NCBI RefSeq assembly: GCF_902459465.1
Contig: NC_047066.1
Coordinates: 16,244,001-16,308,000 of the forward strand
Direction of reading: 5' to 3'
DNA: 64,000 bases
DNA from: Asterias rubens
Lineage: Eukaryota
Shown: one piece after another, positions 1 to 64,000 of the stretch
How the letters are laid out: every line of letters starts with the position of its first letter
How positions within the stretch are numbered: the stretch's first letter is position 1
Translations under genes and position numbers: made by a program
Notes under the pieces: generated by a model
The model's input: only the letters and a program-made list of their open reading frames with translations
Told to the model about the DNA's origin: nothing
The model's database searches: none

Positions 1-430
1 TTTCGGTGGGATCCTGAGGAATTACATGTATGGTGGAATCGCGGTGGAATCCCCTGGGAATCCCGGTGGAATCCCGGTGGAATCCCGGTGGAGTCCTGGT
101 GGAATCCCAGTGGAATCCCAGTGGAAAACCCGGTGGAATCCCGATGGAATCCCGGCGGAATCCCAATGGAAACCCGGCTGGATCCTGGTGGAATCTAAGT
201 GGAATCCCAGTGGAATTCTGGTGGAATCCCGGTGGAATCCCATTAGAACCCCAGTGAAATCCTGATGGAATCCCGGTGGAATCCCAGTGGAATCCCGGTG
301 GAATCCCAGATGGAATCCCAGTGGAATTCTGGTGGAATCCTGGTGGAATTCTGGTAGAATCCCGGTGGAATCTCGGTGGAATCCCACCGGAACTCCGGTC
401 GAATCCCGGTCAAATCCCTGCGGGGTCACA
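1..430. repeat. Degenerate simple repeat of GGTGGAATCCC-like motifs (intronic)
   Basis: Dozens of GGAATCC(C) motifs at roughly 10-12 bp spacing, upstream of the unit A TIL acceptor. Confidence 0.85.
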
Positions 431-649: not shown

Positions 650-3600
650 AACTGAATTGTCAGAGTGAGTTGCTTTATGACTCATGCGGTACATCTTGTC
701 CTGCTACCTGCCTGGAACCAGAAGGATCTGATAATTGTGCAGATGATTGTATTGAAACCTGCCGCTGTCCAGAAGGTCTGCTTCTTGAAGGAGATCACTG
801 CATCCAAGCTTCTGAATGTGGCTGCTTCTTAGAGGATGGATCATACCTGGAAGTTAGTTTGAGATTCATTTCCATTTTAAGACAAGGATGACAGTTCAAG
901 TGTCTTTAGTGATAAACCTTGACGGGTACAGGGAATCAGAATTTGGAGTTGATGGGGGAACAAGTTTTGACCTTATTGTGTTGATTATTTAAGCACCTGA
1001 CTCTTGAAATTACTTCGTATTGGGTAAAACATAATTTGTTGTAATCATGATAACAACAAATATTGTGATGACTTCTGCTGAAAAGTAGGAATCCAACTGC
1101 CTCAAGCCAGAAGGCATGCCATTCATTCAGGTCTAGTAGGAATCAAACTGCCTCAAGCCAGAAGGCATGCCATTCATTCAGGTCTAGTAGGAATCAAACT
1201 GCCTCAAGCCAGAAGGCATGCCATTCATTCAGGTCTAGTAGGAATCAAACTGCCTCAAGCCAGAAGGCATGCCATTCATTCAGGTCTAGTAGGAATCAAA
1301 CTGCCTCAAGCCAGAAGGCATGCCATTCATTCAGGTCTAGTAGGAATCAAACTGCCTCAAGCCAGAAGGCATGCCATTCATTCAGGTCTAGTAGGAATCC
1401 AACTGCCTCAAGCCAGAAGGCATGCCATTCATTCAGGTCTAGTAGGAATCAAACTGCCTCAAGCCAGAAGGCATGCCATTCATTCAGGTCTAGTAGGAAT
1501 CCAACTGCCTCAAGCCAGAAGGCATGCCATTCATTCAGGTCTAGTAGGAATCCAACTGCCTCAAGCCAGAAGGCATGCCATTCATTCAGGTCTAGTAGGA
1601 ATCCAACTGCCTCAAGCCAGAAGGCATGCCATTCATTCAGGTCTAGTAGGAATCCAACTGCCTCAAGCCAGAAGGCATGCCATTCATTCAGGTCTAGTAG
1701 GAATCAAACTGCCTCAAGCCAGAAGGCATGCCATTCATTCAGGTCTAGTAGGAATCCAACTGCCTCAAGCCAGAAGGCATGCCATTCATTCAGGTCTAGT
1801 AGGAATCCAACTGCCTCAAGCCAGAAGGCATGCCATTCATTCAGGTCTAGTAGGAATCAAACTGCCTCAAGCCAGAAGGCATGCCATTCATTCAGGTCTA
1901 GTGGCATTTTGTTTAACTGGCAAAGGTCAAAGGGTCAAATAACATCCAAGTTAATATGATAAGGGATTTTTTTTTCACGACACTCGGGGCAGGTTATGAC
2001 TAACAGTACTTAACTCACATGGGTAATGAGTAAAACAAGAATATCATCCCTGATGCACATTTTGAATCGTTTTAAACTGATTTACTTATTGGTTCATTTA
2101 AAAAACCAAGTAATTTTTTATCTATCACTGTTGACAACCGACAACTTGTGTGTTTTTTACTGATCACAGCATTGCCCAAGAAGTATGTGTTTAGTGACAA
2201 TAATGATTGTTTTATTCTTTTCAATTAGAATGATGGAGTTTGGGTGTCTCATGACTGCTCTTTGAAATGTGTTTGTGGTGAAGCTGGAGATGTGATATGT
2301 ACAAGTATGGAATGTCACGAGTCTGCACGATGTGCCATCAAGAACGGTGTTAGGGACTGTTACTGTAAGAGAGGTTTTACTGGAGATGGACTCAACTGCC
2401 AAGCAGGTAATAAATGAACATGTTACAACCTAAACTAAATCCTGTAACTAATTTGTCACAGTTTGTTTCTATTCAGTCTTAATATGAAAAATGCTCCACA
2501 CTGATTTAATATGTCTTCCTGTCTGAATACAGCTCCTGGTGTATGTACTGCATGGGGAGATCCACATTATGTCACTTTTGACGGTCTGAAGTATGACTTC
2601 CAAGGAGATTGTGATTACACTCTTGTCAGAGATTGCAGAAACACTTCAGCTCTTGCATCCTTCCATGTGATGGCTAAGAATGTCAAAAACAAGCCTTCTG
2701 AACGTGTATCCTACACTCAAGAAGTTAGATTGGAGTTTGGAGGCACTTTGTATTCTCTACTAAGGGATGGAGAGGTTCGAATCAACGGTGTGACTGTAAC
2801 ATTACCCTCCATGCGTCTTGATGGAGTCCATATCTACAATTCTGGTCGCAATGTGGTAAGACTTGTTGTTCAAGTTTAGTTGAAAGTGAAATATATTCAA
2901 TATTTCTTTGGTAAAGTCACATGTAAGATCAATTTGGCTTTTTGAAATGAGTGTTGATAACTTGTTTGGTATTGCTTTGTTTCAGATTTTAACAACTGAC
3001 TTCCAGTTGGAGATTGTTTGGAATAAAAATACAGACGTCATGGTGACAGTTCCTCAAGCCTACTGGAACAGAACTTGTGGTCTTTGTGGAACATTCAACG
3101 GAGACAAGCATGATGATTTTATTCTACCAGATGGATCCCAGGTTAGTGACTTAATATAAAAATAGTTTTCATCTCTGTATTGTTCCTATTTGTTTGGAAA
3201 CCTAGATTAAACAGACTTGTTTCAATTATTTTCTTTTAACCCAACTTTAATTATCATTATAGAGTGATGATCTACTTCGATTTGGAAACAGCTGGGTTTT
3301 GGATGAAGACCAATGTGATCCTACAATAGAGATGCCAGATCCGTGCGATGAGGGCACAGAACCATACCGACAGGCTACTGATCTGTGCTTTGTAGTCATC
3401 GATCAAAACGGTTTGTCAATTCATTATGAACATCCTCATTTTGATAAAAGCCAAATTGAAACAAGTGTCATGAATAACTTAAGAGGTTTTTGAAAGTCGC
3501 TGAACAAAGCTTTTGTATTGGTTTTGTTTCTTTAGGTCCATTTGCATCATGCCATGATTTTGTTGATCCTGTTGCGTATCATGAATCTTGTGTGTATGAT

Positions 3601-3718
3601 CTTTGTGCTACACTTCCTGAAGATGACGTGATCTGTTCCAGTCTTCAGACTTACGCAGATGTTTGCCGTCTTGCTGGAAGTATGGTTGATGACTGGAGAG
3701 CAGTTAGAACGCAATGTG
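650..3718 (+). CDS. Repeat unit A (TIL, TILa/EGF, VWD, C8)
   Basis: Exons 650-852, 2229-2406, 2533-2855, 2986-3141, 3263-3410, 3536-3718. Lengths 203/178/323/156/148/183 sum to 1191 nt (397 aa). Confidence 0.93.
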
Positions 3719-6700
3719 GTATGTTGAGGCGGTTTTTATAATAAGTTGTTTTCTTTTCTTGAAACAGCTTCCCTCTAGTATGTAGTGTTATTTTGACAAA
3801 TTCTCAACAGAACGACTTTTCCCAATGTAGTTCAGATTAATTCTAGAATATCAAGACCACATTCAATGTGAGAGCAATTAAAAATATGCACTTTGAACAA
3901 ACAACCTGTTTTGATGTTTTTTCGGCAATCACTTTCCTGAGATTGAATATCGTTTTAAAGTAGTTTTATTGCAACCTTTCTCCATTTTATTTGTGAATAT
4001 TAGAACTGAATTGTCGGAGTGAGTTGGTTTATGACTCATGTGGTACATCTTGTCCTGCTACCTGCCTGGAACCAGAAGGATCTGATAATTGTGCAGATGA
4101 TTGTATTGAAACCTGCCGCTGTCCAGAAGGTCTGCTTCTTGAAGGAGATCACTGCATCCAACCTTCTGAATGTGGCTGCTTCTTAGAGGATGGATCATAC
4201 CTGGAAGTTAGTTTGAGATTCATTTCCATTTTTAGACAAGGATGACGGTTGAATTGTGTTTTAATTTTAGATTAATCAAACATTCAAATCAGTTTCTAGA
4301 TTGGAGTGGAGAGCTTGCAGTTTGTGGTTAAAATTTGATCCCGATTTTCTCATTAACATCTACATGTATTACACTGGATTTTCTCGTAGCATCGCTCTTA
4401 ATTCTTACACGATTTCTACAATCATAACTTCAATTTGTGATCAGACATTTCCTGCTGAAGAGTGTTTATTTTACTATTATGATGGTTTGATTCTTTTCAC
4501 TATTAGAATGATGGAGTTTGGGTGTCTCATGACTGCTCTTTGAAATGTGTTTGTGGTGAAGCTGGAGATGTGATATGTACAAGTATGGAATGTCACGAGT
4601 CTGCACAATGTGCCATCAAGAACGGTGTTAGGGACTGTTACTGTAAGAGAGGTTTTATTGGAGATGGACTCAACTGCCAAGCAGGTAATAAATGAACATG
4701 TTACAAAATAAACTAAATCCTGTAACTAATTTGTCACAGTTTGTTTCTATTCAGTCTTAATATGAAAAATGCTCCACACTGATTTAATATGTCTTCCTGT
4801 CTGAATACAGCTCCTGGTGTATGTACTGCATGGGGAGATCCACATTATGTCACTTTTGACGGTCTGAAGTATGACTTCCAAGGAGATTGTGATTACACTC
4901 TTGTCAGAGATTGCACAAACACTTCAGCTCTTGCATCCTTCCATGTGATGGCTAAGAATGTCAAAAACAAGCCTTCTGAACGTGTATCCTACACTCAAGA
5001 AGTTAGATTGGAGTTTGGAGGCACTTTGTATTCTCTACTAAGGGATGGAGAGGTTCGAATCAACGGTGTGACTGTAACATTACCCTCCATGCGTCTTGAT
5101 GGAGTCCATATCTACAATTCTGGTCGCAATGTGGTAAGACTTGTTGTTCAAGTTTAGTTGAAAGTGAAATATATTCAATATTTCTTTGGTAAAGTCACAT
5201 GTAAGATCAATTTGGCTTTTTGAAATGAGTGTTGATAACTTGTTTGATATTGCTTTGTTTCAGATTTTAACAACTGACTTCCAGTTGGAGATTGTTTGGA
5301 ATAAAAAGACAGACGTCATGGTGACAGTTCCTCAAGCCTACTGGAACAGAACTTGTGGTCTTTGTGGAACATTCAACGGAGACAAGCATGATGATTTTAT
5401 TCTACCAGATGGATCCCAGGTTAGTGACTAAATAAAGAAATAGTTTTCATATCTGGATTGGCCTTATTTGTTTATAAAACCTAATGTACATTAAACAGAC
5501 TTCTTTCCTTTCTTTTATTTTAACTCAAACTCATTTATCATTATAGAGTGATGATCTACTTCGATTTGGAAACAGCTGGGTTTTGGATGAAGACCAATGT
5601 GATCCTACAATAGAGATGCCAGATCCGTGCGATGAGGGCACAGAACCATACCGACAGGCTACTGATCTGTGCTTTGTACTCATCGATCAAAACGGTTTGT
5701 CAATTCATATTGAACATTCTCAATTTGAAAAGCCAAATTGAAACGAGTGTAATGAAATACTCAAGAGGTTTTTGAAAGTGTCTGAACAAAGCTTTTGTAT
5801 TGATTTTGTTTCTTTAGGTCCATTTGCATCATGCCATGATTTTGTTGATCCTGTTGCGTATCATGAATCTTGTGTGTATGATCTTTGTGCTACACTTCCT
5901 GAAGATGGCGTGATCTGTTCCAGTCTTGAGACTTATGCAGATGTTTGCCGTCTTGCTGGAAGTATGGTTGGTGACTGGAGAGCAGTTAGAAAGCAATGTG
6001 GTATGTTAAGGCATTTTTTAAAAGTTTGTTTTCTTTTCTTGATATACATGTAAACTGCGCCAATAAAGTATCTAAACACTTACAAATGGTCAGATATATC
6101 GGAACCTGAAACAGTATGCCAAAAATAATTATTCATTTCGAGTCACTGTTAATTTCTGCACATTTTGACACATCTTGTGTTGCGCTACGATGTTGTTTGG
6201 TGGATTTACGGGCACTTGAGTGGCTTAAGGTCAAACTTCAAAAGTTGCAAAATCCCCTATTCAAGCTAAATCGTTGTATTGTGATGAGTAAGATCAGCGT
6301 TTCTTTTGCCCGCCTTTTATAAATGATTTTTTTTGGTCGCGTTTTGGATAAATCGGTTGCGATGAACATCAGCAATAATTGTCAGTAACCAAGCAAAGGG
6401 GTCAAAGATGGGAGGCATACAACAATGGTAAGCAAAGAAAGGTGTTTCAAGATAACAGGAAAGATGGCTCAAACGACCAAACAGGAAAGAGGACGGACCA
6501 TTGGTTTGATAGAAGCCGGTACGTCGATGCGAGCTGCAGCTCATCAGGTGAAAACATCAGCAGCGACGGTCAGTAAATGGTGGAATCGCTACCAAGCTCA
6601 GGGAAATGTGGACGACCTGCCAAGGACTGGTCGTCCGAGGGTGACTTCTGCAGCAGAAGAAGAAAGTGAACAAAGCCATAAAGCCTGACACCACTCTCGA

Positions 6701-9700
6701 GGGGTTTGCGACGCATCCTGATCAGGAAATGGCAGGGGATTGACCAGGGACAGATCAGAGGTCTCATTGAGAGTATGAGAAGACGACTCCTTGCCGTTCA
6801 GGACAATGATGGAGGACACACCAAGAATGGAGGATAGGATAACAGCAGTTTTAAAGTTAAAGATACGGCAATTAATTCCATGGTCATGTAAACGAAACGA
6901 GTTTGTGTCTTTTGTCTTGATTTTGTCTGAGTGTGACGCTTATGTGAGTTCCCTTTTGGAATTGGGGTGAATAGGGGCTTTTGCAACTTTTGAAATTCGA
7001 CCTTAAGCCACTCAAGTGTCCATAAATCCACCAAACAACATCGTAGCGCAACACAAGATGTGTCAAAACGTGCAGAAATTAACGGTGAATAGAAACGAAC
7101 AATTACATTTTTGTATACTATTTCAGGTTCCGATAAATCTGACCATTTGTAAGTGTTTAGATACTTTATTGGCGCAGTTTAGCTTCCTCCTAGTATGTAG
7201 TTGTTTTTTCTTTTCATTCTCAACAGAACAACTTTGTCCAAAGTAGTTCAGATTAATTCTAGAATGATCCAGACGACATTCAATGCAAGAGCGATGGAAA
7301 CTATGCTCTGTGAACAAATAACACTTTTATAGGATCTGAGGCATTGCATGGTGAGGTATCAAAAGTCTCCCGAACACCCGAGCAATCTACTCGCGGTAGT
7401 AGAATAAAGCAAGACAGTTCTCCAAGAACAAACTCTACCTGGCAAGTAGATACACACATGGTGTTACCGCAAACCAAGTATATATAAACAACAAGTTGCT
7501 ATATCTTTGGTGAATCACGTTCCATCGTTTTAAAGTAGTTTTATTACAACCTACTCCATTTTATTTGTGAATGTAGATTTGAATTGTCGGAGTGAGTTGG
7601 TTTATGACTCATGTGGTACATCTTGTCCTGCTACCTGCTTGGAACCTGAAGGATCTGATAATTGTGCAGATGATTGTATTGAAACCTGCCGCTGTCCAGA
7701 AGGTCTGCTTCTTGAAGGAGATCACTGCATCCAACCTTCTGAATGTGGCTGCTTCTTAGAGGATGGATCATACCTGGAAGTTAGTTTGAGATTCATTTCC
7801 ATTTTTAGACAAGGATGACGGTTGAATTGTGTTTTATTTTTAGATTAATCAAACATTCAAATTAGTTTCTAGAGTGGAGTGGAGAACTTGCAGTTTGTGG
7901 TTAAAATTTGATCCCGATTTTCTCATTAACATCTACATGTATTACACTGGATTTTCTCGTAGCATCGCTCTTAATTCTTACACGATTTCTACAATCATAA
8001 CTTCAATTTGTGATCAGACATTTCCTGCTGAAGAGTGTTTATTTTACTATTATGATGGTTTGGTTCTTTTCACTATTAGAATGATGGAGTTTGGGTGTCT
8101 CATGACTGCTCTTTGAAATGTGTTTGTGGTGAAGCTGGAGATGTGATATGTACAAGTATGGAATGTCACGAGTCTGCACAATGTGCCATCAAGAACGGTG
8201 TTAGGGACTGTTACTGTAAGAGAGGTTTTATTGGAGATGGACTCAACTGCCAAGCAGGTAATAAATGAACATGTTACAACCTAAACTAAATCCTGTAACT
8301 AATTTGTCACAGTTTGTTTCTATTCAGTCTTAATATGTAAAATGCTCCACACTGATTTAATATGTCTTCCTGTCTGAATACAGCTCCTGGTGTATGTACT
8401 GCATGGGGAGATCCACATTATGTCACTTTTGACGGTCTGAAGTATGACTTCCAAGGAGATTGTGATTACACTCTTGTCAGAGATTGCAGAAACACTTCAG
8501 CTCTTGCATCCTTCCATGTGATGGCTAAGAATGTCAAAAACAAGCCTTCTGAACGTGTATCCTACACTCAAGAAGTTAGATTGGAGTTTGGAGGCACTTT
8601 GTTTTCTCTACTAAGGGATGGAGAGGTGCGAATCAACGGTGTGACTGTAACATTACCCTCCATGCGTCTTGATGGAGTCCATATCTACAATTCTGGTCGC
8701 AATGTGGTAAGACTTGTTGTTCAAGTTTTGTTGAAAGTGTTACATTTATAATAATTCTTTTGTTTAAAGTCACCTTAGAAGATCATTATGGCTTTTTGAA
8801 ATGTGTGTTGATAACTTGTTTGGTATTGCTTTGTTTCAGATTTTAACAACTAACTTCCAGTTGGAGATTGTTTGGAATAAAAAGACAGACGTCATGGTGA
8901 CAGTTCCTCAAGCCTACTGGAACAGAACTTGTGGTCTTTGTGGAACATTCAACGGAGACAAGCATGATGATTTTATTCTACCAGATGGATCCCTGGTTAG
9001 TGACTAAATAAAGAAATAGTTTTCATATCTGGATTGGCCTTATTTGTTTATAAAACCTAATGTACATTAAACAGACTTCTTTCCTTTCTTTTATTTTAAC
9101 TCAAACTCATTTATCATTATAGAGTGATGATCTACTTCGATTTGGAAACAGCTGGGTTTTGGATGAAGACCAATGTGATCCTACAATAGAGATGCCAGAT
9201 CCGTGCGATGAGGGCACAGAACCATACCGACAGGCTACTGATCTGTGCTTTGTACTCATCGATCAAAACGGTTTGTCAATTCATATTGAACATTCTCAAT
9301 TTGAAAAGCCAAATTGAAACGAGTGTAATGAAATACTCAAGAGGTTTTTGAAAGTGTCTGAACAAAGCTTTTGTATTGATTTTGTTTCTTTAGGTCCATT
9401 TGCATCATGCCATGATTTTGTTGATCCTGTTGCGTATCATGAATCTTGTGTGTATGATCTTTGTGCTACACTTCCTGAAGATGGCGTGATCTGTTCCAGT
9501 CTTGAGACTTATGCAGATGTTTGCCGTCTTGCTGGAAGTATGGTTGGTGACTGGAGAGCAGTTAGAAAGCAATGTGGTATGTTAAGGCATTTTTTAAAAG
9601 TTTGTTTTCTTTTCTTGATATACATGTAAACTGCGCCAATAAAGTATCTAAACACTTACAAATGGTCAGATATATCGGAACCTGAAACAGTATGCCAAAA

Positions 9701-57303: not shown

Positions 57304-57352
<49 letters not shown>

Positions 57353-60300
57353 AAGGAACGCATTGTCAAGGAGTAAGCCTATAGTGCCCACGCTTAAAGG
57401 CAGTGGACATTATTGGTAATTACTCAAAATAATTATGAGCATAAAACCTCACTTGGTAACGAGTATAGGCAGAGGTTGGTAGTATTACACATTGCGAAAA
57501 AACGGCTCCCACTGAAGTGACAAAGTTTTCGAGAAAAGTAATTTTCCACGAACTTGATTTCGAGACTCCAGATTTAGAATTTGTGGTCTCGAAATCAAGC
57601 ATCTGAAAGCACACAACTTCGTGTGACAAGGATGTTTTTTCTTTCATTATTATCTTGCAACTTTGACGTCTAATTGAGTTCAAAATTTCACAGGTTTGTT
57701 TTATGCATATGTTGAGCTACACAAAATGAGAAGACTGGTCTTTGACAAAACCAATAGTGTCCAGTGTCTTTAAAACCCTTGTTTCAGCTCAGCAGAAATA
57801 AGCAGGATACCACAAGGTAATTTGATCCCAGTAAGCATACATTTCTGGGCTACTTTATGGGTTAAAGCAGGACAATGAAATCGGGCTTGGAATTACGCGA
57901 AGGCAACTGAGGCCTGTTACCTACGTCATGGCTGGTCTTGATACACCTCCATAACGATAATTGAAGAAACAAAAACTGCATGCATTTATATAGCGCCTAA
58001 CACCTCCAAAAGAAAACCTCTATAAAGCGCTCAGAGGAAACACAGAATAATTATATGACGAATTGAACAGAAATGTTTTGAAGAGACTCTTGAAACTTGG
58101 ATAGAGGTAGCTCGTTTGATGTTGATTGTTCCATAAATGAGATGCAGCAAACTGAAAACCACGTTTGACCACATTGTTTTTGACAATTATTTTCGTGCCA
58201 ATATTTGCAGTGCCCTTGGCAGTTTATAAATGGGCTTGCCCTCTAAAATATGAAATTTCGACATGTGAAATTGGTGCTTGTATTTTTCACCCCCCCCCCC
58301 CCCCCCCCCAACCCAATCAAAAATGCAAGGAAACCATGGTTTGAATGCGGGAAAAACTAGTATGGTTCTTGTTTTTTCTTTGAAATTCACCCATCGTGAT
58401 TGTATAATGCACATTCAAAAATCTTGACAAATATGGCGGCAGGGATAACAGGTTCCGGGGTGACTTTCATAGGTCACGTTTTAACCTACATAGTTTGGTA
58501 GTTTTCTTTTGAAATCATCAAGGTAAAGAGAGAGAAAAAAAATTAATTGTACCGGATACTAGACGTACCTGTAAATACATATCGATCAAAATGGAAAGTA
58601 TAATCGTTAACGTGGCAGGCGCTTGTGTGAAACACAATGGACATGCGCTGTGAGCTAAAGGTATTCAAAAGAACAGATCGCAGCGTGTGGAAACTAGGTA
58701 AACCTTGGAGCGCCATTTTGGGGCACTTATATATAGAGGAAACGATTGGTTTTGCACAAAATGAAAAGAACGAATATAGGACGGGAAAATTATTTCTGAA
58801 ACCATTCTTTGGTACTAACTGGTGATCCGGTTTTAATTCTTCAAATGTAAAACAATTGGATGAAACTTGTGGGCATGTTGTAATATTAGTTAGTATTAAT
58901 CGGATCTAATAAGCTCATATTTGGTGTCATTGGTGTGAGGATGGTTTGGGTTCGGTTGTGTTGATTCAGTGATCTGACAGGGGCGTACGTTTAATATATA
59001 TATTTTGAGAGATCGTCTAACATTACAATAACGGACGGCCACTTCAGTGTGAATGTGAAGGATACACCTCACCGATTTGGACTATCGACTTGGCAAATCA
59101 CCTGCCAATAAAGACACGTTGCCACATACATGTAATGGCTAGGGTTGAAACAGGGTTACCTCCCTCACAGTCCGTTGGACGTAGGCATAGGTATGCATCC
59201 ACCAAAGGAGCCTATAGCCGACAAAACAGAATGCACTATTTCAATTTTTTTTTTATGAACCCATTATGGTGAAGTGCCCTGCTCATGCGCTCAAGTTAGT
59301 GTCATGGCCGGGAATCAAACCAACACTCTTCTGCTGACAACACCAAGTCTTGGGTCCGGCGAACTTCACGGCTTTGCCACGACACGAAATTATAGTCGTG
59401 AAAGTAGCATTTTACGGAAATTGCACTCAAACTGTTTGTTAGAAACGCTTCAAGGAGTCCAGGACACAATTTCACAGAGCTGCTTTTTAATGCAGACAAT
59501 AATTTTTGGCTAAGCAAACGATGTTCGGCTTAGCAAAACATTGTATACGAATTCAGTATTATAATGTTGGCTAAGCAGCTCACGGAAACATGGCCCTGCC
59601 GGTAACCACTTATTTGGAGGTCCCCTTTTAGAAGTTTAAACGACGAATACGGTTTATATATTATGTTCGCAAATTAATTTAATTTTGTGAATGAAATGGA
59701 CACTTCATTCATTTTGTCACATCCTCAATTTTCTGCGTTCTTAAAATGTTATCAAAAAGTCCATCTCATGTGGTAGATTAAATTGAATCTCACGCAATGT
59801 GTTTATTTGTTGTGCTTTGCAGTTGAGTCAACAACATTCCAAACAACAATGCTGACAACTGATGACAGTACAACAATAGTAACATATCAGAGCACGACAT
59901 GGGACTTCACAACAGAGGGCGCCACCACCACCGACGGTGCGATCACAACTGATCGTACCACGTTGGGTGCGTTGTCAACTACTGCAGCATCCACAACTGA
60001 TGAGTCGACGTCGATGCAACAATCAACAACTTTAGAACCTTTGTCGACCACTGACGAGTCAACAACTACAGCCTTCACAACAGATCGTACCACGTTGGGT
60101 GCGTTATCAACTACTGCAGCATCCACAACTGATGAGTCGACGTCGATGCAACAATCAACTTCAGAACCTCTGTCGACCACTGACGAGTCAACAACTACAG
60201 CCTCCACAATTGATGACGCGACGTCAACTCAACAATCAACTACTTCCGAGCTGTTGATGACCACTGACGAGTCAACAACAAAAGAAGAAGCAACGACGTT

Positions 60301-63300
60301 GAAAGTGTCCACAACAACTCGTCCACCATCAACAACAACTCTTCCATCATTAACAACTCGTCAACCATCAACAACAACTCTTCCACCATCAACAACTACA
60401 CAGCCAGCAGTGACCACCGATCAACCAACTACAACTATGACACCAATTACGTCATCACCGTCAACTACACAACCGACCATCCTTTATAATCTTACCCTCA
60501 CAAATAAGAACAGCACCTCACTCACCATCTCATGGACGATCTTCGTAGAGGTGGCGGCCCTTCAGGTCCAGTGGCGCCCTCTCTCGGCTGGTTCAAACTT
60601 CGAGAGCAGCGGTGCTGTTTTTGCAACTCTGCCCGAGTACAAGTTGACTGGTCTGATGGCAGCCACTACGTATGAGATACGCCTTGCTTTGCCGAGGAAT
60701 GGAGTGCTAGAGACTGGGGACTCTGTGTTTGATACTACATGTCCCGAAGGATTCACAAATCTCCTTTGTTCAGAGGGTAAAACAATGTTTACTAGAGACG
60801 AAATAAATTCTTTAAAGGCAGTGGACACTATTGGTAATTGTCAAAGACCAGCCTTCACAGTTGGTGTATCTCAACATAAGCATAAAATAACAAACCTGTG
60901 AAAATTTGAGCTCAATCGGTCATCGAACTTGCGAGATAATAATGAAAGAAAAAAACACCGTTGTCACACAAAGTTGTGTGCGTTTAGATGGTTGATTTCG
61001 AGACCTCAAGTTCTAAATCTGAGGAATCGAAATCAAATTCGTGGAATATTACGTCTTTCTCTAAAACTATGGCACTTCAGAGGGAGCCAATTCTCACAAT
61101 GTTTTATACCATCAACCTCTCCCCATTACTTGTCACCAAGTAAGGTTTTATGCCAATAATTATTTTGATTAATTACCAATAGTGTCCACTGCCTTTAAGG
61201 GGACGTATATACCTTTGATTTTTGTAACCGTTCGATGGTTTTAATCCTTTATGTAAATATAGATTATACAATAAAACTTATTTTTGAAAAAGGTGAAAGC
61301 GGTATTGAGATATCGCCGAAAATCCGGAGCGGTTTATTTTTAGTCCTCGGAGGAAGATAATTGGTTATTGGAATACACAATCTGAGAAACATTCAAATTC
61401 AAATGTTGGTAACATAAAAACTGGTATCTTTTCCCATAACAACGTACTTCAAAGTGTTCAGATTCTCAGAATGCTGTGTACTATCGAAAGCTGCTGTACT
61501 AAGTACCAAACAAAAACCTCCCAATTTTATTAACAAATATCCAATTGTACAGAGGGTGAGTTTCATCGTAACCGTCAAAACTGGAAATACATTTTTTTTG
61601 CAAAGAGAAAATACGCAAAGAACGGTTCATGGTCAAAAAGGTTAATTTATTAATGGCAATGTGACATCGGGGCTCTCTTAAAAGTAACGCCTAAAAACAT
61701 GATGTGGCAATCTGTCATCTAGTCAATATAATAGGGAGTTTTCGCTTTGGACGACGGATATGGTTCTGCGACGGTGAACCATCCGTCGTCCAAAACTCCA
61801 TATTCTCTTGGTAACAGAGACTCGGTTTGAATAACCGAACCCCGTATGATTATTTACGAATACAATTTTTTTGATGTATGTATTTAATCTAATTTGCCTT
61901 TAGATATAACCATCTACGGACTTACCCTCGACACTGCAACCAGTAGCTCCCTGTCTGTATCTTGGCATCTCACCGGCCCAGTGGACTGGATCGAGCTAGA
62001 GTACCAAGTAGTAGAGTTTGATACCTCATGGCGGCAATCGTCCGTTCTCACGGGCACCACTACCTCAGACACCCTGTTCGGTCTAGAGCCAGAGCAACAG
62101 GTGCTGATCAGGATACACGCAAGGGGTCTAGACGGCACTGATGCGTACACGGAGCAGAAAACATTTGAGACTTGTATCAGATTCTATCAGGGAGCTTCAT
62201 GCGAGGAATGTAAGAATACCAACTGGGGTTCTTTAAGTTTAGTTTTGTTTGTTCATTGCGTACATAAGCCATTTTTGTTTAAAGTATTGAAGGTAGGTAT
62301 TACATAAAGGTTTAATAATAGTAAGAGTTGTCCATGTCGAGATTGATACATATGGGTATCTAGATGAGTTAAGATGGCTTAGAGAAGTCTTTTCTTAGAT
62401 GGAGATGCCCTTTCTTTGAGCTTCCGTCTCTTTTACGGCAAAGTTTTTGTTTCATTGTGAGCAGTTCTAAGACGTTTCGAAGTTTGTGATTTCAATATGA
62501 GGATACTCCCGTCGCTGTATTATTATTTTTATTTTTGAACAATTCAGATATTATTTGTTAAAACTTTGTTTGTGTTTAGCTCTACCGTATGATGGAAGTA
62601 TATTCGGCAGGAGTAGTTCTGCAGTAGCATTCGGGTTGGATTCGAACCTGAACGCTGATACAGTGACCGGACAGTACCTGAGTGGCTCCACGTTTCTACG
62701 GCAATCCTGGGTCTTTGGAGATACCATTGATGCTGCACGCACGTCGTACATCTTCAATGGGCTGAACCCCAACACCGATTACAACGTGCGTTTCGTGTAC
62801 GTTGGAAGCGCGGGAAATGTGACTATTTCACAGACGTACGGTGTGAACACGTGTGCCGTAGGTTTCCAGGGCGTTAACTGCGAGGGAGGTAAAGCTATAA
62901 TGACAACATTTCTTCTTTTCAACATTATCTTCTGCCCGAAATGTGCAATAATTTTTGACATCGTTTTCAAAAGAATTGGTGATGAGTTAACATTAAATAC
63001 CCCGTTTGTTTTATAATATTAATTAACGCAAGTTTCATTGTTTCATATAACAAAAATTAAAAACATTTTCGATCATTATTTCAAATAAAATTTATTGTAA
63101 ACAGTATTAAGTAATGGTTAAATAAATACAATCGCGGAAGTCGCTAAATTCGTCTGAAAATGCTCAAGACGCTTCACAAAGTTAGAGTTAAAAGTAAATT
63201 GTATTCAAAATTACATGAGCAAACATGGTCGCGGCATGATAATTTACCTGCCGTCGATTTCACCATACTTTTCCAAGCTCGGGATTAATCCTAGGACTTT

Positions 63301-63873
63301 TAGGGCGAGTTAAGTTCCGTATCCATGGACAGGACGCATGGAATCCATTCTAAGTTAGGACAGGTTACTCGTCGTAACTCGGAACAAGATTAATCTTAGC
63401 GTTTCTTGAAATCGGCTGCTGGTCTGTCGTGAAGACCCGTACATTATGTAAGCTGAGTATACAGAAAATGCGACTTAAGAATTTCGAACAATGTTTAAAG
63501 CAGATATCTTTATTATCTACCCGCTGATGTCGAACATTGTTTCTTCTTGTCATTTCAGATTACTCTTTGGGAGCATACGATCTCAAGCTGGTAGAAGCGG
63601 CAAGCACTTACTTCACTGTAACATGGGAAACCACAGCCGATATAACATCGTACGAGGTGCAGTACCGCGTTGATGAAGGAGACACCCAGTGGGTATCTAT
63701 CGGCCCGTTCGCGGCAGGACGGACGGCTATTACAATCGAGAACCTTTCCCCGTTCACGTTCTACACCGTGCGTGTTGTGTTAACACTCTCTGGTGATCAG
63801 GGCAATGTTACTAGCGGTGAACTCAGGTTGTTGACATGTCGACCGGTGTTTATTGGTTTGAACTGTCAGACAT
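650..63873 (+). CDS. Giant multi-exon extracellular protein, partial at both ends: (TIL-TILa/EGF-VWD-C8)x10, TIL-TILa/EGF, PTS mucin, (FN3 + half-EGF)x4; FCGBP/zonadhesin/tectorin-like
   Basis: 67 exons have canonical AG/GT boundaries and compatible phases, and join without a stop over 14190 nt. Motifs seen: [11 protein letters not shown] and [10 protein letters not shown] (VWD), GPFASCH...C8, and 10-Cys TIL. The join across 46576..59822 rests on phase match (1 to 1) and Thr-rich continuity only. Confidence 0.88.
1084..1902. repeat. 51-bp minisatellite, 16 copies
   Basis: Unit agtaggaatc(c/a)aactgcctcaagccagaaggcatgccattcattcaggtct, starting at 1084, 1135 and so on. Confidence 0.95.
4004..6000 (+). 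CDS. Repeat unit B
   Basis: Exons 4004-4206, 4507-4684, 4811-5133, 5264-5419, 5547-5694, 5818-6000; same sizes and phases as unit A. Confidence 0.93.
6053..7179 (+). mobile_element. Non-autonomous Tc1/mariner-family element, copy 1 (internally deleted)
   Basis: TA on both sides (6051-52, 7180-81). Imperfect TIRs of about 210 bp (6053-6263, 6968-7179) start AACTGCGCCAATAAAG. Tc1 HTH remnant ...[27 protein letters not shown] (6425-6688) and C-terminal remnant ...[21 protein letters not shown] are present; the DDE core is absent. Confidence 0.9.
7326..7500. repeat. About 175-bp insertion, probably an interspersed-repeat fragment (also near 10902-11076 and 14455-14630)
   Basis: Present in the three Tc1-bearing C8-TIL introns and absent from the paralogous introns after units A, E and F. 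Boundaries are approximate. Confidence 0.5.
7577..9576 (+). CDS. Repeat unit C
   Basis: Exons 7577-7779, 8080-8257, 8384-8706, 8840-8995, 9123-9270, 9394-9576. Confidence 0.93.
9629..10755 (+). mobile_element. Non-autonomous Tc1-family element, copy 2
   Basis: Same insertion site and flanks as copy 1, offset 3576 bp. Confidence 0.9.
11153..13152 (+). CDS. Repeat unit D
   Basis: Exons 11153-11355, 11656-11833, 11960-12282, 12416-12571, 12699-12846, 12970-13152; offset exactly 3576 bp from unit C. Confidence 0.92.
13205..14308 (+). mobile_element. Non-autonomous Tc1-family element, copy 3 (23 bp shorter)
   Basis: Same site. It lacks aaagccataaagcctgacaccac, which fuses the HTH and C-terminal remnants in frame (ORF 13577-13966). 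Confidence 0.9.
14705..16720 (+). CDS. Repeat unit E
   Basis: Exons 14705-14907, 15208-15385, 15512-15834, 15974-16129, 16257-16404, 16538-16720. Confidence 0.93.
17006..18998 (+). CDS. Repeat unit F
   Basis: Exons 17006-17208, 17501-17678, 17805-18127, 18265-18420, 18543-18690, 18816-18998. Confidence 0.93.
19281..21274 (+). CDS. Repeat unit G (C8 ends in the variant [15 protein letters not shown])
   Basis: Exons 19281-19483, 19783-19960, 20087-20409, 20538-20693, 20821-20968, 21092-21274. Confidence 0.93.
21615..23793 (+). CDS. Repeat unit H (mosaic: homogenised 5' exons, diverged second VWD exon)
   Basis: Exons 21615-21817, 22067-22244, 22371-22693, 22963-23118 ([18 protein letters not shown]...), 23369-23516 ([11 protein letters not shown]...), 23611-23793. 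Confidence 0.9.
23969..24128. repeat. 48-bp tandem repeat, 3 copies plus a partial copy
   Basis: cctggttaatc(c/a)aacttgaatcctgtttataaccagtgacccaatcaa at 23969, 24017, 24065 and 24113. Confidence 0.9.
24376..24649 (-). mobile_element. tRNA-derived SINE
   Basis: Reverse strand reads gccgagcgataagagcacc...gggtttgaatcccc (B-box), then gtgacacttgtgtccttaagcaagacact..., ending in an AT-rich tail. It is homologous to the SINE at 36920-43470. Confidence 0.8.
24793..29423 (+). CDS. Repeat unit I (diverged apart from its TIL exon)
   Basis: Exons 24793-24995, 25661-25838, 26431-26747 ([12 protein letters not shown]), 28212-28367, 28580-28727, 29241-29423; phases match units A-H. Confidence 0.9.
29997..30353. 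mobile_element. MITE with TTAA TSD and AGG...CCT termini (Kolobok-like)
   Basis: TTAA at 29993-96 and 30354-57; imperfect TIR aggatttgggtacttttt / aaaaagtacctagttcct. Confidence 0.65.
30839..43702 (+). CDS. Repeat unit J (diverged; first VWD exon split by an extra intron)
   Basis: Exons 30839-31041, 31672-31849, 32665-32885 ([12 protein letters not shown]), 34202-34309, 35872-36027, 36531-36678, 43523-43702. Confidence 0.88.
32016..32204. mobile_element. Short palindromic MITE-like element
   Basis: ttgaccc...gggtcaat ends, with internal inverted pair ccattttggtggtcaat / attgaccaccaaaatgg. Confidence 0.5.
33748..33901. mobile_element. MITE-like element with CCTG..TCGATTTCAC / GAAATCGA..CTGG ends
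   Basis: Ends resemble those of the elements at 43963 and 63247. Confidence 0.45.
34573..34952. mobile_element. Kolobok-like MITE, copy 1
   Basis: TTAA TSD (34569-72, 34953-56); TIR aggcagtggacactattggtaatt / aattaccaagagtgtccactgtct; homologous to the copies at 57398 and 60816. Confidence 0.8.
34990..35085 (-). mobile_element. tRNA-related SINE-like fragment (second family)
   Basis: ggatttgaacacaacctttg...gcagatg is an inverted homologue of 47125-47205 and carries a B-box-like motif on the minus strand. Confidence 0.5.
35149..35264. repeat. Long imperfect hairpin, MITE-like; related fragment at about 33421-33500
   Basis: gttatc...gcgagtggaattacggaaaaatatagcgcttctgcgtccca pairs with tgggacgcagacgcgctatattttccgtatttccacg...gataac. 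Confidence 0.6.
36920..43470 (+). mobile_element. tRNA-derived SINE interrupted by amplification of its own internal 60 bp
   Basis: A-box-like TGGTTGAGTGG at 36930-40. The SINE body (accataattgctttgtccttcagatggga...ggtccc) resumes at 43308 and aligns with the SINE at 24376-24649. The 3' end is approximate. Confidence 0.82.
36967..43307 (+). repeat. 60-bp satellite, 106 monomers, no spacers
   Basis: Monomer gtgtttctattattaagcagagtgtgggttcaagtcc(t/c)ggtcgtgacactcgtctctttg. Length 6341 = 106x60 minus 19 nt of small deletions. Confidence 0.97.
43963..44122. mobile_element. Hairpin MITE
   Basis: ccctggggtggatttcacaaagagttaggactag and ctagtcctaactctttgtgaaatcgaaccctggg are inverted repeats of about 34 bp. 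Confidence 0.7.
44752..46575 (+). CDS. Terminal TIL and TILa/EGF exons (unit K)
   Basis: Exon 44752-44954 ([20 protein letters not shown]...) and exon 46380-46575 ([16 protein letters not shown]...[17 protein letters not shown], followed by gtgaga). Confidence 0.88.
45082..45654. repeat. 81-bp minisatellite, 7 copies, alternating variants
   Basis: Copies start at 45082, 45169, 45250, 45331, 45412, 45493 and 45574. The first copy is 6 bp longer. Confidence 0.95.
47125..47205 (+). mobile_element. tRNA-related SINE-like fragment (second family)
   Basis: catctgctctagcaatgcaaaggtcgtgaagttcggatccc contains a B-box-like motif; homologous to 34990-35085. Confidence 0.45.
47213..48395 (-). mobile_element. 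5'-truncated L2/CR1-group LINE 3' end, interrupted by a MITE
   Basis: Minus strand encodes [37 protein letters not shown], then [15 protein letters not shown]...[15 protein letters not shown], then a gcgctttataaat...(att)n-type tail. These are typical ORF2 C-terminal motifs. Confidence 0.8.
47408..48009. mobile_element. 602-bp non-autonomous DNA transposon with 9-bp TSD and TAG...CTA ends (AcademH-like candidate)
   Basis: TSD ccttaaaac at 47399-47407 and 48010-48018; 18-bp TIR tagtctggtcccctgacc / ggtctgggaaccagacta (16/18 match). Confidence 0.8.
49630..49775 (+). mobile_element. Degenerate L2/CR1-like LINE 3' remnant
   Basis: Reads RHFRSA...[12 protein letters not shown], then after a frameshift LFKNHL*K. 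Confidence 0.4.
55262..55440 (+). mobile_element. tRNA-derived SINE head
   Basis: A-box TGGCTCAGTGG (55266-76) and B-box GGTTCAAATCC (55309-19), with no convincing acceptor stem. Confidence 0.6.
57305..57352. repeat. (GAT)16 microsatellite
   Basis: Direct reading. Confidence 0.97.
57398..57769. mobile_element. Kolobok-like MITE, copy 2
   Basis: TTAA at 57394-97 and 57770-73; co-linear with 34573-34952. Confidence 0.8.
57975..58170 (-). mobile_element. Degenerate L2/CR1-like LINE 3' remnant
   Basis: Minus strand reads [12 protein letters not shown]...KTFLFNS with frameshifts, followed by a gcgctttatagag...gcgctatataaat tail. Confidence 0.5.
59255..59390 (-). mobile_element. Degenerate tRNA-derived SINE head
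   Basis: gtgtcatggccgggaatcaaaccaacactc..ctgctga is homologous to 24560-24610. Confidence 0.55.
59823..60776 (+). CDS. Thr/Ser-rich mucin (PTS) segment, FN3 domain and half-EGF loop
   Basis: tttgcag acceptor, 954-nt open phase 1-1 exon, gtaaaa donor. About 215 aa are Thr-rich, followed by LYNLTL...SLTISW...[16 protein letters not shown] (FN3) and [11 protein letters not shown]. Confidence 0.88.
60816..61194. mobile_element. Kolobok-like MITE, copy 3 (inverted relative to copies 1 and 2)
   Basis: TTAA at 60812-15 and 61195-98; TIR aggcagtggacactattggtaatt / aattaccaatagtgtccactgcct. Confidence 0.82.
61904..62209 (+). CDS. FN3 + half-EGF exon 2
   Basis: Phase 1-1 exon: SSSLSVSW...[16 protein letters not shown]...[11 protein letters not shown]; gtaaga donor. 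Confidence 0.85.
62580..62888 (+). CDS. FN3 + half-EGF exon 3
   Basis: Phase 1-1 exon: ...[18 protein letters not shown]...[11 protein letters not shown]; gtaaag donor. Confidence 0.85.
63247..63422. mobile_element. MITE-like element related to the elements at 43963 and 33748
   Basis: cctgccgtcgatttcacc...gaaatcggctgctgg ends; internal taagttaggac motif shared with the 43963 element. Confidence 0.45.
63559..63873 (+). CDS. FN3 + half-EGF exon 4 (gene continues past the window)
   Basis: Phase 1-1 exon: FTVTW...YEVQYR...[15 protein letters not shown]...[11 protein letters not shown]; gtaagt donor; no stop codon reached. Confidence 0.87.
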
Positions 63874-64000
63874 GTAAGTTTTATATTGTTGTGTCTTAAA
63901 AAGAGCTCTCCTCTCCAAGTATGTGACATAGTTCATTCCAGGTTAATTATTTACTATTTGCTTTACCAATCAATTATGTAAACTTGTATGTGCTTTTGAG

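What the first reader, a model, noticed from the sequence alone, without database searches (positions are those of the whole stretch)
650..63873. Gel-forming VWD-C8-TIL array joined to a mucin stalk and an FN3 chain in one predicted >4700-aa protein
Seen: 10 VWD-C8-TIL-TILa/EGF units and a last TIL/EGF exon ending GPTT at phase 1. The next strong exon is phase 1, Thr-rich (VESTTFQTT...) and followed by FN3 exons. Known: vertebrate FCGBP, zonadhesin and alpha-tectorin use VWD-C8-TIL arrays but have no FN3 chain, and FN3/EGF chains are typical of cell-surface receptors. Inference: this may be a hybrid in which a polymerising, self-cleaving mucus or adhesive head sits on a glycosylated stalk and possibly a membrane-anchored FN3 tail. 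Candidate roles are adhesion, mucus barrier or gamete coat.
Basis: partly seen in the sequence, partly recalled or inferred. Interest (0 to 1): 0.72.

Follow-up and report, generated by a model that had tools for sequence, protein, structure and literature searches.

The report
Giant membrane-anchored VWD-FN3 sea-star protein
A sea-star gene really does join a long chain of mucus-type (von Willebrand D) modules to a sugar-rich stalk, fibronectin-type modules and a membrane anchor in one protein of about 7,800 residues. Acorn worms share this design, no vertebrate protein listed here has it, and its function is unknown.

Summary
The window carries 10 complete VWD-C8-TIL-TILa/EGF assemblies plus one extra TIL/EGF pair at its start. 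The last exon ends at 46575 in phase 1, and a phase-1 Thr-rich exon follows at 59823 with FN3 exons after it.

Spliced transcript contigs from three public runs cross the 59823 acceptor. In two runs they carry 2,621 further upstream letters. My exon model predicts 2,622 if the partner is exon 46380-46575 with no exon in between.

The model has 118 canonical exons over 136 kb and one open frame of 7,796 aa:
- a signal peptide and 16 EGF modules
- 15 D assemblies, all with GDPH
- 2 internal FN3 modules
- a 215-aa stalk that is 37% Thr
- 6 more FN3 modules, a transmembrane helix and a roughly 100-aa tail

There is no cystine knot, FCGBP_N, MAM or SEA domain in the locus. It is therefore neither a gel-forming mucin nor a true FCGBP or zonadhesin.

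Two annotated acorn-worm proteins also combine D assemblies with the same FN3 + Cys-loop module. One has the same order from D assembly to membrane anchor, so the design is an old ambulacrarian family.

The most likely role is a cell-surface-tethered, FCGBP-like coat or adhesion protein. Tissue and function are untested. The scan's earlier notes hold no similar finding.

The parts
650..2406 (+). TIL exon (650-852) and TILa/EGF 'E' exon (2229-2406). They complete D assembly 5, whose VWD and C8 exons lie upstream of the window.
   Evidence: The TIL exon is 94% identical to the reference TIL exon. The C8 exon lies at window coordinate -712..-530.
2533..4684 (+). D assembly 6. Exons: 2533-2855, 2986-3141, 3263-3410, 3536-3718, 4004-4206, 4507-4684.
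   Evidence: GDPH is present and there are 34 Cys.
4811..8257 (+). D assembly 7. Exons: 4811-5133, 5264-5419, 5547-5694, 5818-6000, 7577-7779, 8080-8257.
   Evidence: It is 96-99% identical in protein to D6 and D8-D12.
8384..11833 (+). D assembly 8. Exons: 8384-8706, 8840-8995, 9123-9270, 9394-9576, 11153-11355, 11656-11833.
   Evidence: Pfam was run on these exons.
11960..15385 (+). D assembly 9. Exons: 11960-12282, 12416-12571, 12699-12846, 12970-13152, 14705-14907, 15208-15385.
   Evidence: The protein is 100% identical to D8.
15512..17678 (+). D assembly 10. Exons: 15512-15834, 15974-16129, 16257-16404, 16538-16720, 17006-17208, 17501-17678.
17805..19960 (+). D assembly 11. Exons: 17805-18127, 18265-18420, 18543-18690, 18816-18998, 19281-19483, 19783-19960.
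20087..22244 (+). D assembly 12. Exons: 20087-20409, 20538-20693, 20821-20968, 21092-21274, 21615-21817, 22067-22244.
22371..25838 (+). D assembly 13. Exons: 22371-22693, 22963-23118, 23369-23516, 23611-23793, 24793-24995, 25661-25838. It is 84% identical to D6-D12.
   Evidence: The point where the RNA contigs stop, 24946/24976, lies in its TIL exon.
26431..31849 (+). D assembly 14, a divergent copy. Exons: 26431-26747, 28212-28367, 28580-28727, 29241-29423, 30839-31041, 31672-31849.
32665..46575 (+). D assembly 15, a divergent copy with its first VWD exon split in two. Exons: 32665-32885, 34202-34309, 35872-36027, 36531-36678, 43523-43702, 44752-44954, 46380-46575. The last exon ends GPTT + 1 base.
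   Evidence: Pfam VWD, C8, TIL, TILa/EGF_3. The last exon is held by the same runs that hold the FN3 exons.
36962..43307 (.). A 60-bp x 106 satellite inside the intron between exons 36531-36678 and 43523-43702.
46576..59822 (+). A 13.2-kb phase-1 intron (GT...AG) rich in transposon fragments. It separates the D-assembly array from the stalk exon.
   Evidence: Contigs cross the acceptor, and none of their upstream letters map to 58001-59819.
59823..60776 (+). Stalk exon: 215 aa with 37% Thr and 14% Ser (129-bp and 81-bp repeats), followed by FN3 module 1, which ends T-C-x2-G-x5-C.
61904..62209 (+). FN3 module 2 (306 nt, phase 1-1).
   Evidence: Spliced contigs in X1, X10 and X12. Pfam fn3 3.3e-5.
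62580..62888 (+). FN3 module 3 (309 nt, phase 1-1). Its N-terminal half is degenerate.
   Evidence: Pfam fn3 3.1e-4. Family HMM 2.6e-8, partial match.
63559..63873 (+). FN3 module 4 (315 nt, phase 1-1). The gene continues past the window with FN3-5, FN3-6, the TM exon and the tail exon at window coordinates 64109-71943.
   Evidence: Pfam fn3 1.1e-9. Structure model pLDDT 92.8. Downstream exons.

Best explanation
The window holds the middle and most of the 3' part of one very large gene of a sea star. The gene spans about 136 kb with 118 modelled exons and a 23.4-kb coding sequence.

The conceptual product is a 7,796-aa type I membrane glycoprotein. In order it has:
- a signal peptide and 6 EGF modules
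- a D assembly (VWD-C8-TIL-E), 4 EGF, a second D assembly and 6 EGF
- 2 FN3 modules
- 13 more D assemblies, seven of them 96-100% identical through very recent tandem duplication
- a 215-aa Thr/Ser-rich stalk, presumably O-glycosylated
- 6 FN3 modules, each closed by a two-cysteine loop
- a transmembrane helix and a roughly 100-aa cytoplasmic tail with no recognisable domain

Shown here: the domains, the canonical splice sites, the open frame, the splicing of the stalk and FN3 exons, and a transcript that runs from the stalk exon back through about 2.6 kb of upstream exons.

Inferred:
- Each VWD self-cleaves at GD|PH, and the pieces stay joined by the conserved Cys four residues upstream, as in FCGBP.
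- The protein sits on an epithelial or secretory cell surface as a tethered, protease-resistant, mucus-like or adhesive coat. The FN3 chain and stalk act as a spacer that holds the D-assembly array away from the membrane.
- It does not polymerise the way gel-forming mucins do.
For: Domains.

Gene model: all 118 exons have AG/GT and give one open frame with a single terminal stop.

RNA:
- Contigs of X1, X10 and X12 (two species labels, three studies) skip the introns exactly at 60776/61904, 62209/62580, 62888/63559 and onward past 63873.
- They cross 59823 with 2,621 (X1, X12) or 1,324 (X10) further upstream letters that do not lie in 58001-59819.
- Their alignments start at 59820, because the intron's last three letters, CAG, equal the last three letters of exon 46380-46575.
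- A k=31 unitig simulated on the model starts at 24946, where the TIL exon becomes identical to 7 other copies. That leaves 2,622 unaligned letters, against 2,621 observed.
- The same runs hold exon 46380-46575.

Anchor: a TM helix at model residues 7675-7695 followed by HRRWNR.

Self-cleavage motif: GDPH and the upstream Cys occur in 15 of 15 VWD domains. The cleavage chemistry is described in PMC10880436 and PMC8267560.

Cross-species support:
- Glandiceps XP_077995227.1 has D assembly - FN3 x6 - D assembly - FN3 modules with STP-rich linkers - FN3 x2 - TM - tail. Its C-terminus aligns collinearly with this one through the TM helix.
- XP_077996405.1 matches the EGF / D assembly / FN3-pair N-terminal part.
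Against: - The letters of the contig parts upstream of 59820 were not shown. The link to 46575 therefore rests on length arithmetic (1 nt off), the shared CAG, and the same runs holding both sides. It does not rest on read letters.
- Nothing here shows that the N-terminal 2,700 residues belong to the same transcript. That rests on phase compatibility, short introns and the hemichordate homologue.
- Exon boundaries in the repeated units are predicted only.
- The copy number of the near-identical units could be mis-assembled.
- No annotated protein for this locus turned up in the protein collections.
- Contig depth upstream of the junction is lower than on the FN3 contigs in X1 and X12 (23 vs 124 and 11 vs 31). 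This could mean 3' bias or a shorter isoform.
- Tissue, localisation, glycosylation and cleavage are all untested.
Confidence: 0.72

Rival explanations
1. There are two neighbouring genes: a secreted FCGBP-like array that ends after 46575, and a separate small mucin-FN3-TM gene. On this reading the junction-crossing contigs are a minor read-through or chimeric assembly product.
For: - The intron is unusually long at 13.2 kb.
- The junction contigs have lower depth than the FN3 contigs in X1 and X12.
- No fused annotated protein was found.
Against: - Three runs from three studies show the same junction.
- In X10 the junction contig has 78% of the FN3 contig's depth, 339 vs 435.
- The upstream contig length fits the VWD exon chain to within 1 nt.
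- Exon 59823 has no in-frame start with a signal peptide. The exon ending at 46575 has no stop and ends at a good donor, CAG|GTGAGA.
- The hemichordate homologue has the same fused order.
Confidence: 0.07
2. The gene is real, but the run of seven near-identical D assemblies is partly an assembly artefact with the wrong copy number. Alternatively it is polymorphic, so the true protein is shorter or longer than 7,796 aa.
For: - Genomic units U2-U4 are 98-99% identical over 3.57 kb, including introns and a transposon fragment.
- The RNA unitigs break at the repeat boundary, so they cannot count copies.
- The Thr-rich exon already shows length variants between individuals.
Against: - The units are not identical. 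They differ by 1-7% and in intron length (2.28-3.58 kb). That argues for distinct assembled copies, not a collapsed or inflated repeat.
- There are no N gaps in the window.
Confidence: 0.2
3. It is mainly a signalling or cell-cell adhesion receptor rather than a mucus-like coat. On this reading the FN3 chain and cytoplasmic tail are the business end and the D assemblies act as a ligand-binding head. A zonadhesin-like role in gamete binding is one variant of this.
For: - The FN3 modules fold like those of NCAM, LAR, neogenin and Robo.
- It is a single-pass TM protein with a roughly 100-aa tail.
- A short tail motif, SNRAYE, recurs in the Glandiceps protein.
- Zonadhesin is likewise a TM-anchored D-assembly protein (own knowledge; listed among multi-VWD proteins in PMC4948705).
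Against: - The tail has no Pfam domain.
- The SNRAYE match alone has E 0.89.
- Fifteen GDPH D assemblies with recent tandem amplification look like a bulk structural or protective array, as in FCGBP (PMC10880436).
- No tissue data are available.
Confidence: 0.2

Closest known systems
FCGBP (IgGFc-binding protein, vertebrates)
   Same: - A long tandem array of VWD-C8-TIL-E assemblies.
- GDPH in nearly all VWD domains, with the Cys that keeps the cleaved strand attached.
- Blocks of almost identical internal repeats (PMC10880436, PMC8267560).
- The top sequence hits are named FCGBP-like.
   Different: - No FCGBP_N domain in the locus.
- It has 16 EGF modules, 8 FN3 modules, a Thr-rich stalk and a TM anchor. 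FCGBP is secreted and has none of these.
Zonadhesin (vertebrate sperm membrane protein)
   Same: A type I membrane protein that combines a mucin-like segment, several VWD-C8-TIL assemblies, a single TM helix and a short tail (own knowledge).
   Different: - No MAM match on this chromosome among the matches listed.
- The stalk and 6 FN3 modules lie between the D array and the membrane, where zonadhesin has an EGF module.
- It has 15 rather than 4-5 D assemblies.
Glandiceps talaboti XP_077995227.1 (uncharacterized, 3,581 aa) and XP_077996405.1 ('IgGFc-binding protein-like', 3,443 aa)
   Same: - D assemblies combined with the same FN3 + T-C...G...C loop module.
- The first protein has D assembly - STP-rich region - FN3 - TM - tail in the same order. 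Its C-terminus aligns collinearly at pairwise E 7e-16.
- The second matches the EGF / D assembly / FN3-pair N-terminal part at 34% identity over 590 aa.
   Different: - Far fewer D assemblies.
- 19 FN3 modules in the first protein, 11 of them alternating with STP-rich linkers.
- Only 22-38% identity.
- Neither protein has been studied.
Gel-forming mucins / von Willebrand factor
   Same: VWD-C8-TIL-E assemblies and a PTS-like segment.
   Different: - No cystine knot in the locus, and no VWC among the exons modelled or scanned.
- The PTS is only 215 aa and lies after all the D assemblies.
- The protein is membrane anchored.
Sea-star footprint proteins Sfp1/Sfp2 (Asterias rubens adhesive)
   Same: Large sea-star proteins with VWD, C8, TIL and EGF domains that are proposed to form cohesive meshworks (PMC9382459).
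   Different: - That paper's catalogue mentions neither fibronectin nor transmembrane domains.
- The Sfps carry lectin, discoidin or FAMeT domains, which are absent from the model here.

Membership tests
Gel-forming mucin / VWF family | C-terminal cystine-knot (CTCK) dimerisation domain | tested here: not met
   A genome-wide PF00007 search found 11 matches and none on contig C5. The modelled C-terminus is FN3-TM-tail.
Gel-forming mucin / VWF family | N-terminal D1-D2-D'D3 followed by a large central PTS domain | tested here: not met
   All 15 D assemblies come before a single 215-aa Thr-rich segment, and EGF and FN3 modules interrupt the N-terminal D assemblies.
Gel-forming mucin / VWF family | VWD-C8-TIL(-E) assemblies | tested here: met
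   Pfam VWD, C8, TIL and TILa/EGF_3.
FCGBP | N-terminal FCGBP_N (PF17517) domain | tested here: not met
   The genome has 11 PF17517 matches. The nearest is at C5:15,107,247, about 1.07 Mb from the gene. The N-terminus here is a signal peptide plus EGF modules. Lang et al. 2016 found no FCGBP_N+VWD proteins in echinoderms (PMC4948705).
FCGBP | Tandem D assemblies with GDPH and the Cys that retains the strand | tested here: met
   15 of 15 assemblies have C-x-x-[WT]-G-D-P-H.
FCGBP | Secreted, with no membrane anchor | tested here: not met
   A TM helix at model residues 7675-7695 followed by a basic stop-transfer sequence.
Zonadhesin | N-terminal MAM domains | tested here: not met
   Of 152 PF00629 matches, none of the 150 listed lies on C5. 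The search reports lower bounds only.
Zonadhesin | Mucin segment + D-assembly array + single TM + short tail | tested here: met
   The order differs: here the mucin segment follows the array.
Transmembrane mucins (MUC1/3/12/13/16/17 type) | SEA domain next to the membrane and a dominant PTS region | tested here: not met
   PF01390 has 2 matches, both on C3. The STP-rich windows span about 250 of the 7,796 residues.
Ambulacrarian VWD-FN3 membrane proteins (provisional; Glandiceps XP_077995227.1 type) | D assemblies plus FN3 modules that end in the invariant T-C...C loop | tested here: met
   In an alignment of 21 modules, both Cys are invariant and the Thr is at least 90% conserved. A family HMM finds 8 modules here, 19 in P0003 and 5 in P0010.
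Ambulacrarian VWD-FN3 membrane proteins (provisional; Glandiceps XP_077995227.1 type) | Order: D assembly - STP-rich region - FN3 - TM - cytoplasmic tail | tested here: met
   The last two FN3 modules and the TM helix align collinearly (E 7e-16).
Ambulacrarian VWD-FN3 membrane proteins (provisional; Glandiceps XP_077995227.1 type) | Orthology (shared descent of the whole gene, not just its modules) | tested here: inconclusive
   Identity is only 22-38%, no tree was built, and no other echinoderm member could be retrieved.

The most novel reading that the evidence does not exclude
This would be the first recognised membrane-tethered FCGBP-type protein. It would be a deuterostome family in which a self-cleaving D-assembly array stands on an FN3/mucin stalk at the cell surface.

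On this reading the protein's own FN3 modules could serve as docking partners for D assemblies of neighbouring molecules. That would echo the binding between RGM, which has a GDPH-cleaved VWD-like domain, and neogenin, which uses its FN3 domains. The result would be a surface-anchored lattice that links secreted mucus or adhesive material to the cell.
Probability: 0.1. Interest if true: 0.7.

Novelty: new variant of a known kind. Interest (0 to 1): 0.42.

Why it matters
VWD-C8-TIL arrays are known from secreted mucus proteins such as mucins and FCGBP, and from a few anchored proteins such as zonadhesin. What the many FCGBP D assemblies do is still unknown (PMC10880436).

A naturally membrane-anchored array of 15 assemblies, all with GDPH, gives a different context for asking that question. 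It is conserved in outline between a sea star and an acorn worm, and it is expressed.

It also shows that the gene space of such arrays is under-annotated. No protein for this locus turned up in the collections searched. The seven near-identical units offer a clean example of very recent exon-block amplification.

The protein may also be relevant to sea-star mucus or adhesion biology, if its tissue turns out to be epidermis or tube feet.

Tried and rejected
1. Looking for an existing gene model.
- A full HMMER scan with the stalk/FN3 exon found one 308-aa genomic read-through fragment, the two Glandiceps proteins, bacterial FN3 proteins, and many short hits to a SINE translated at the end of the open stretch.
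- Long-query searches with P0003 and P0217 (length ranges 1,970-6,267 and 3,233-10,288 aa) listed no protein flagged as the window's own. No echinoderm entry had fn3.
- A search with the P0010 FN3 pair found only itself, because of word-index limits.

I used length arithmetic instead.

3. Tail motif SNRAYE. It is shared with Glandiceps, but its E-value alone is 0.89, so it is only a hint.

4. Furin-like RNKR in the last FN3. One site in 7,796 aa is about what chance gives, so I make no claim from it.

5. Sfp identity. The footprint-protein paper mentions neither fibronectin nor transmembrane domains, so I did not equate the two.

6. Literature searches for VWD + TIL + FN3 + transmembrane + mucin found nothing, and a sea-star variant found nothing relevant.

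7. Paralogues. The tail exon and the FN3-4 exon are single-copy in this genome.

8. No homologous exons lie upstream of window coordinate -60000, apart from the signal-peptide exon at -63839.
Full report
**Where we are.** The window is G000:C5:16244001-16308000, plus strand, in a 417.6-Mb genome of 150 contigs. Earlier notes of the scan call the organism a sea star. An Asterias rubens FCGBP-like protein (P0217) matches another chromosome of this genome exon by exon at 95-96% identity. I therefore take the organism to be Asterias rubens or a very close relative. That is an inference. There are no N runs in the window.

**Checking the observation.**
- Open stretches on the plus strand show a periodic set of Cys-rich exons.
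- Pfam on one repeated unit gives TIL (4e-12), TILa/EGF_3 (8e-8 / 6e-8), VWD in two exons (2e-23, 3e-15) and C8 (4e-18).
- The divergent last unit also scores: VWD 1.9e-14, C8 1.3e-16, TIL 4.7e-11, TILa/EGF_3 3e-7 / 1e-7.
- I used the six exons of one unit as probes and snapped each hit to the nearest in-phase AG or GT. Every unit then has the same plan:
  - first VWD exon, intron phase 1 to 0
  - second VWD exon, 0 to 0
  - a linker exon, 0 to 1
  - C8, 1 to 1
  - TIL, 1 to 0
  - TILa/EGF ('E'), 0 to 1
- The window holds ten VWD-C8 sets and eleven TIL/E pairs. The first pair (650-852, 2229-2406) completes an assembly that begins upstream.
- The last E exon, 46380-46575, ends G-P-T-T plus one base before GTGAGA.

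**Is it one transcript?** I laid four public runs on 58001-64000. Three of them (X1; X10 and X12; two species labels, three studies) carry contigs that skip the introns at canonical sites, so they contain spliced RNA.
- After resolving one- or two-letter ambiguities, the exons are 59823-60776, 61904-62209, 62580-62888 and 63559-63873. All have lengths divisible by three and are phase 1-1.
- Contigs cross the 59823 acceptor. X1 record 1 and X12 record 10 each have 2,621 further letters upstream, and X10 record 5 has 1,324. None of these letters lie in 58001-59819.
- All three alignments begin at 59820, three letters inside the intron. Those three letters (CAG) are also the last three letters of exon 46380-46575, while the fourth letter differs.
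- I summed my exon lengths back from 46575. The distance to the start of the E exon of D assembly 13 is 2,575 nt.
- The TIL exon before it shares its 30-mer 24946-24975 with seven other copies and then diverges at 24976.
- A k=31 unitig simulated on the model mRNA runs from 24946 to 60004. That leaves 2,622 letters unaligned upstream of 59820, against 2,621 observed in two independent runs.
- The right-hand end differs by 24 nt, at a site where these individuals carry a variant (table 3). A one-letter offset is therefore within what allelic differences produce.
- Any extra exon in the 13.2-kb intron would break this agreement.
- The same runs hold exon 46380-46575.
- In X10 the junction contig has 78% of the depth of the FN3 contig. 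In X1 and X12 it has less, which fits 3' bias on a very long mRNA but does not exclude a shorter isoform.

I did not see the letters of the upstream parts, so the link is strongly supported rather than read directly.

**Beyond the window, downstream.**
- There is a fifth FN3 exon (64109-64450) and a sixth split in two (67493-67604, 68503-68735).
- A 100-nt exon then encodes a 21-residue hydrophobic helix followed by H-R-R-W-N-R (70780-70879).
- A terminal exon (71670-71943) ends in a stop.
- All phases fit. X1 record 2 has 2,248 letters past 63873, enough for these exons plus about 1.2 kb of 3' UTR.
- The next gene, about 30 kb further on, looks like an aromatic amino-acid decarboxylase.

**Beyond the window, upstream.**
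- There are five more D assemblies, 16 EGF modules, and two FN3 exons at -23759 and -22531 (Pfam fn3 7e-7 and 0.012; family HMM 2e-12 for the weaker one).
- Nothing homologous lies beyond -60000.
- At -63839 an ATG opens a classic signal peptide. It ends at a perfect phase-1 donor and matches the phase of the first EGF exon.

**The model.** Joined together, 118 exons, every one with AG and GT, give 23,391 nt and one open frame of 7,796 residues with a single terminal stop. That the N-terminal 2,700 residues belong to the same mRNA is inferred from three things: the phases, the short introns between blocks (0.5-2 kb at the block boundaries), and the hemichordate homologue. No RNA evidence bears on it.

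**Anatomy.**
- All 15 VWD domains have G-D-P-H with a Cys four residues before the Gly. Each assembly has 34 Cys, except D1 with 32.
- Assemblies D6-D12 are 96-100% identical in protein, and D13 is 84% identical to them.
- Three genomic units are 98-99% identical over 3.57 kb, including introns and a transposase-HTH fragment (HTH_28, 1.3e-6). These duplications are therefore very recent.
- The stalk is 215 residues with 37% Thr and 14% Ser, built from 129-bp and 81-bp repeats. Its length varies between individuals.
- The eight FN3 modules all end in T-C, a Gly-rich turn and a second Cys. A profile built from four of them finds the other four at 2e-8 to 2e-15.
- An AlphaFold model of the fourth C-terminal module is confident (pLDDT 92.8). 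It is an ordinary FN3 sandwich closest to NCAM2, LAR, tenascin-derived and neogenin domains.
- The tail has no Pfam match.

**Relatives.**
- The only close eukaryotic matches to the stalk/FN3 exon in 1.8 billion representatives are two proteins of the acorn worm Glandiceps talaboti.
- XP_077995227.1 (3,581 aa) reads: D assembly, six FN3, D assembly with E module, eleven FN3 modules alternating with STP-rich linkers, two FN3, a TM helix and an 80-aa tail. All 19 of its FN3 modules carry the same two-Cys ending.
- Its last 380 residues align collinearly with the sea-star C-terminus through the TM helix (E 7e-16, 22% identity).
- XP_077996405.1 (3,443 aa, named IgGFc-binding protein-like) matches the EGF / D assembly N-terminal part at 34% over 590 residues. 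It has FN3 pairs immediately before D assemblies, as here.
- By contrast, the two result lists of 120 long FCGBP- or zonadhesin-like proteins hold no other entry with an fn3 Pfam domain. That includes the crinoid, sea-cucumber and sea-star entries.
- The combination is therefore rare in current annotation but not unique, and probably old within Ambulacraria. The tail and FN3-4 exons are single-copy in this genome.

**What it is not.**
- No cystine-knot match lies on this chromosome.
- No FCGBP_N match lies within 1 Mb.
- None of the listed MAM matches lies on this chromosome.
- The only SEA matches are on another chromosome.

The defining features of gel-forming mucins, FCGBP proper, zonadhesin and SEA-type membrane mucins are therefore each missing.

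**Most likely mechanism.**
- By analogy with FCGBP, the GDPH sites would cleave autocatalytically in the secretory pathway. There, all GDPH sites are cut, the fragments stay disulfide-linked, and the cut domains become more protease-resistant (PMC8267560, PMC10880436). The result here would be a stable, beaded ectodomain.
- The O-glycosylated stalk and six FN3 modules would hold the array off the membrane.
- I favour a tethered mucus-like or adhesive surface coat (about 0.5) over a receptor or gamete-binding role (about 0.2 each, and not exclusive).
- Polymerisation is neither indicated nor excluded.

**Verdict.** The finding is real and its central inference is correct. The gene is larger and more mosaic than described. 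It is a new variant of the VWD-array proteins with hemichordate counterparts, expressed, and of unknown function.

Noticed in passing
window 4004-14704 (also 650-24792): Three genomic repeat units of 3.55-3.58 kb are 98-99% identical across exons, introns and an embedded transposase-HTH ORF (6389-6685, 9965-10261, 13541-13963; Pfam HTH_28 1.3e-6). Shorter 2.3-kb units lack most of that insert. This looks like very recent tandem duplication or gene conversion of whole exon blocks.
   Followed up: partly
window 36962-43307: A 60-bp x 106 satellite (97% matches) fills most of one intron. It was already noted by the scan as s1-150633.
   Followed up: partly
window 60811-61198 and about 63242-63425: Two high-copy interspersed elements lie in introns. 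The first attracts RNA-contig depth of about a million and hundreds of loose ends. It also explains the many short protein hits to the end of the open stretch. The second has 40+ copies at 81-84% identity across the genome.
   Followed up: no
window 59975-60355: The Thr-rich exon varies in length between individuals or species. The X1 contig lacks 60027-60155 (129 bp). X10 and X12 have an extra AAC after 60351. An ENA-derived fragment (P0001) is 51 residues shorter.
   Followed up: partly
window 32-418, 1084-1902, 45082-45654: Further intronic or flanking tandem repeats: 11 bp x 35, 51 bp x 16 (99% matches) and 81 bp x 7.
   Followed up: no
L004:4504-4734 (window coordinate 68503-68735): The only furin-like site of the whole model (R-N-K-R, residue 7641) sits in an insertion of the membrane-proximal FN3 that is absent from the Glandiceps homologue. 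One such site is about the chance expectation, so this is only a lead for shedding.
   Followed up: partly
L004:7671-7940 and P0003 C-terminus: The cytoplasmic tails of the sea-star and acorn-worm proteins share the short motif S-N-R-A-Y-E. The match is too short to be significant on its own.
   Followed up: partly
window coordinate about +104200 to +120600 (loci L010, L011): The next gene downstream on the same strand has exons resembling an aromatic-L-amino-acid (DOPA) decarboxylase.
   Followed up: no
P0003 residues 1598-3204: The 'mucin-like' middle of the Glandiceps protein is really 11 near-identical repeats of about 145 aa. Each is one FN3 + Cys-loop module plus a roughly 45-aa STP-rich linker.
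   Followed up: partly
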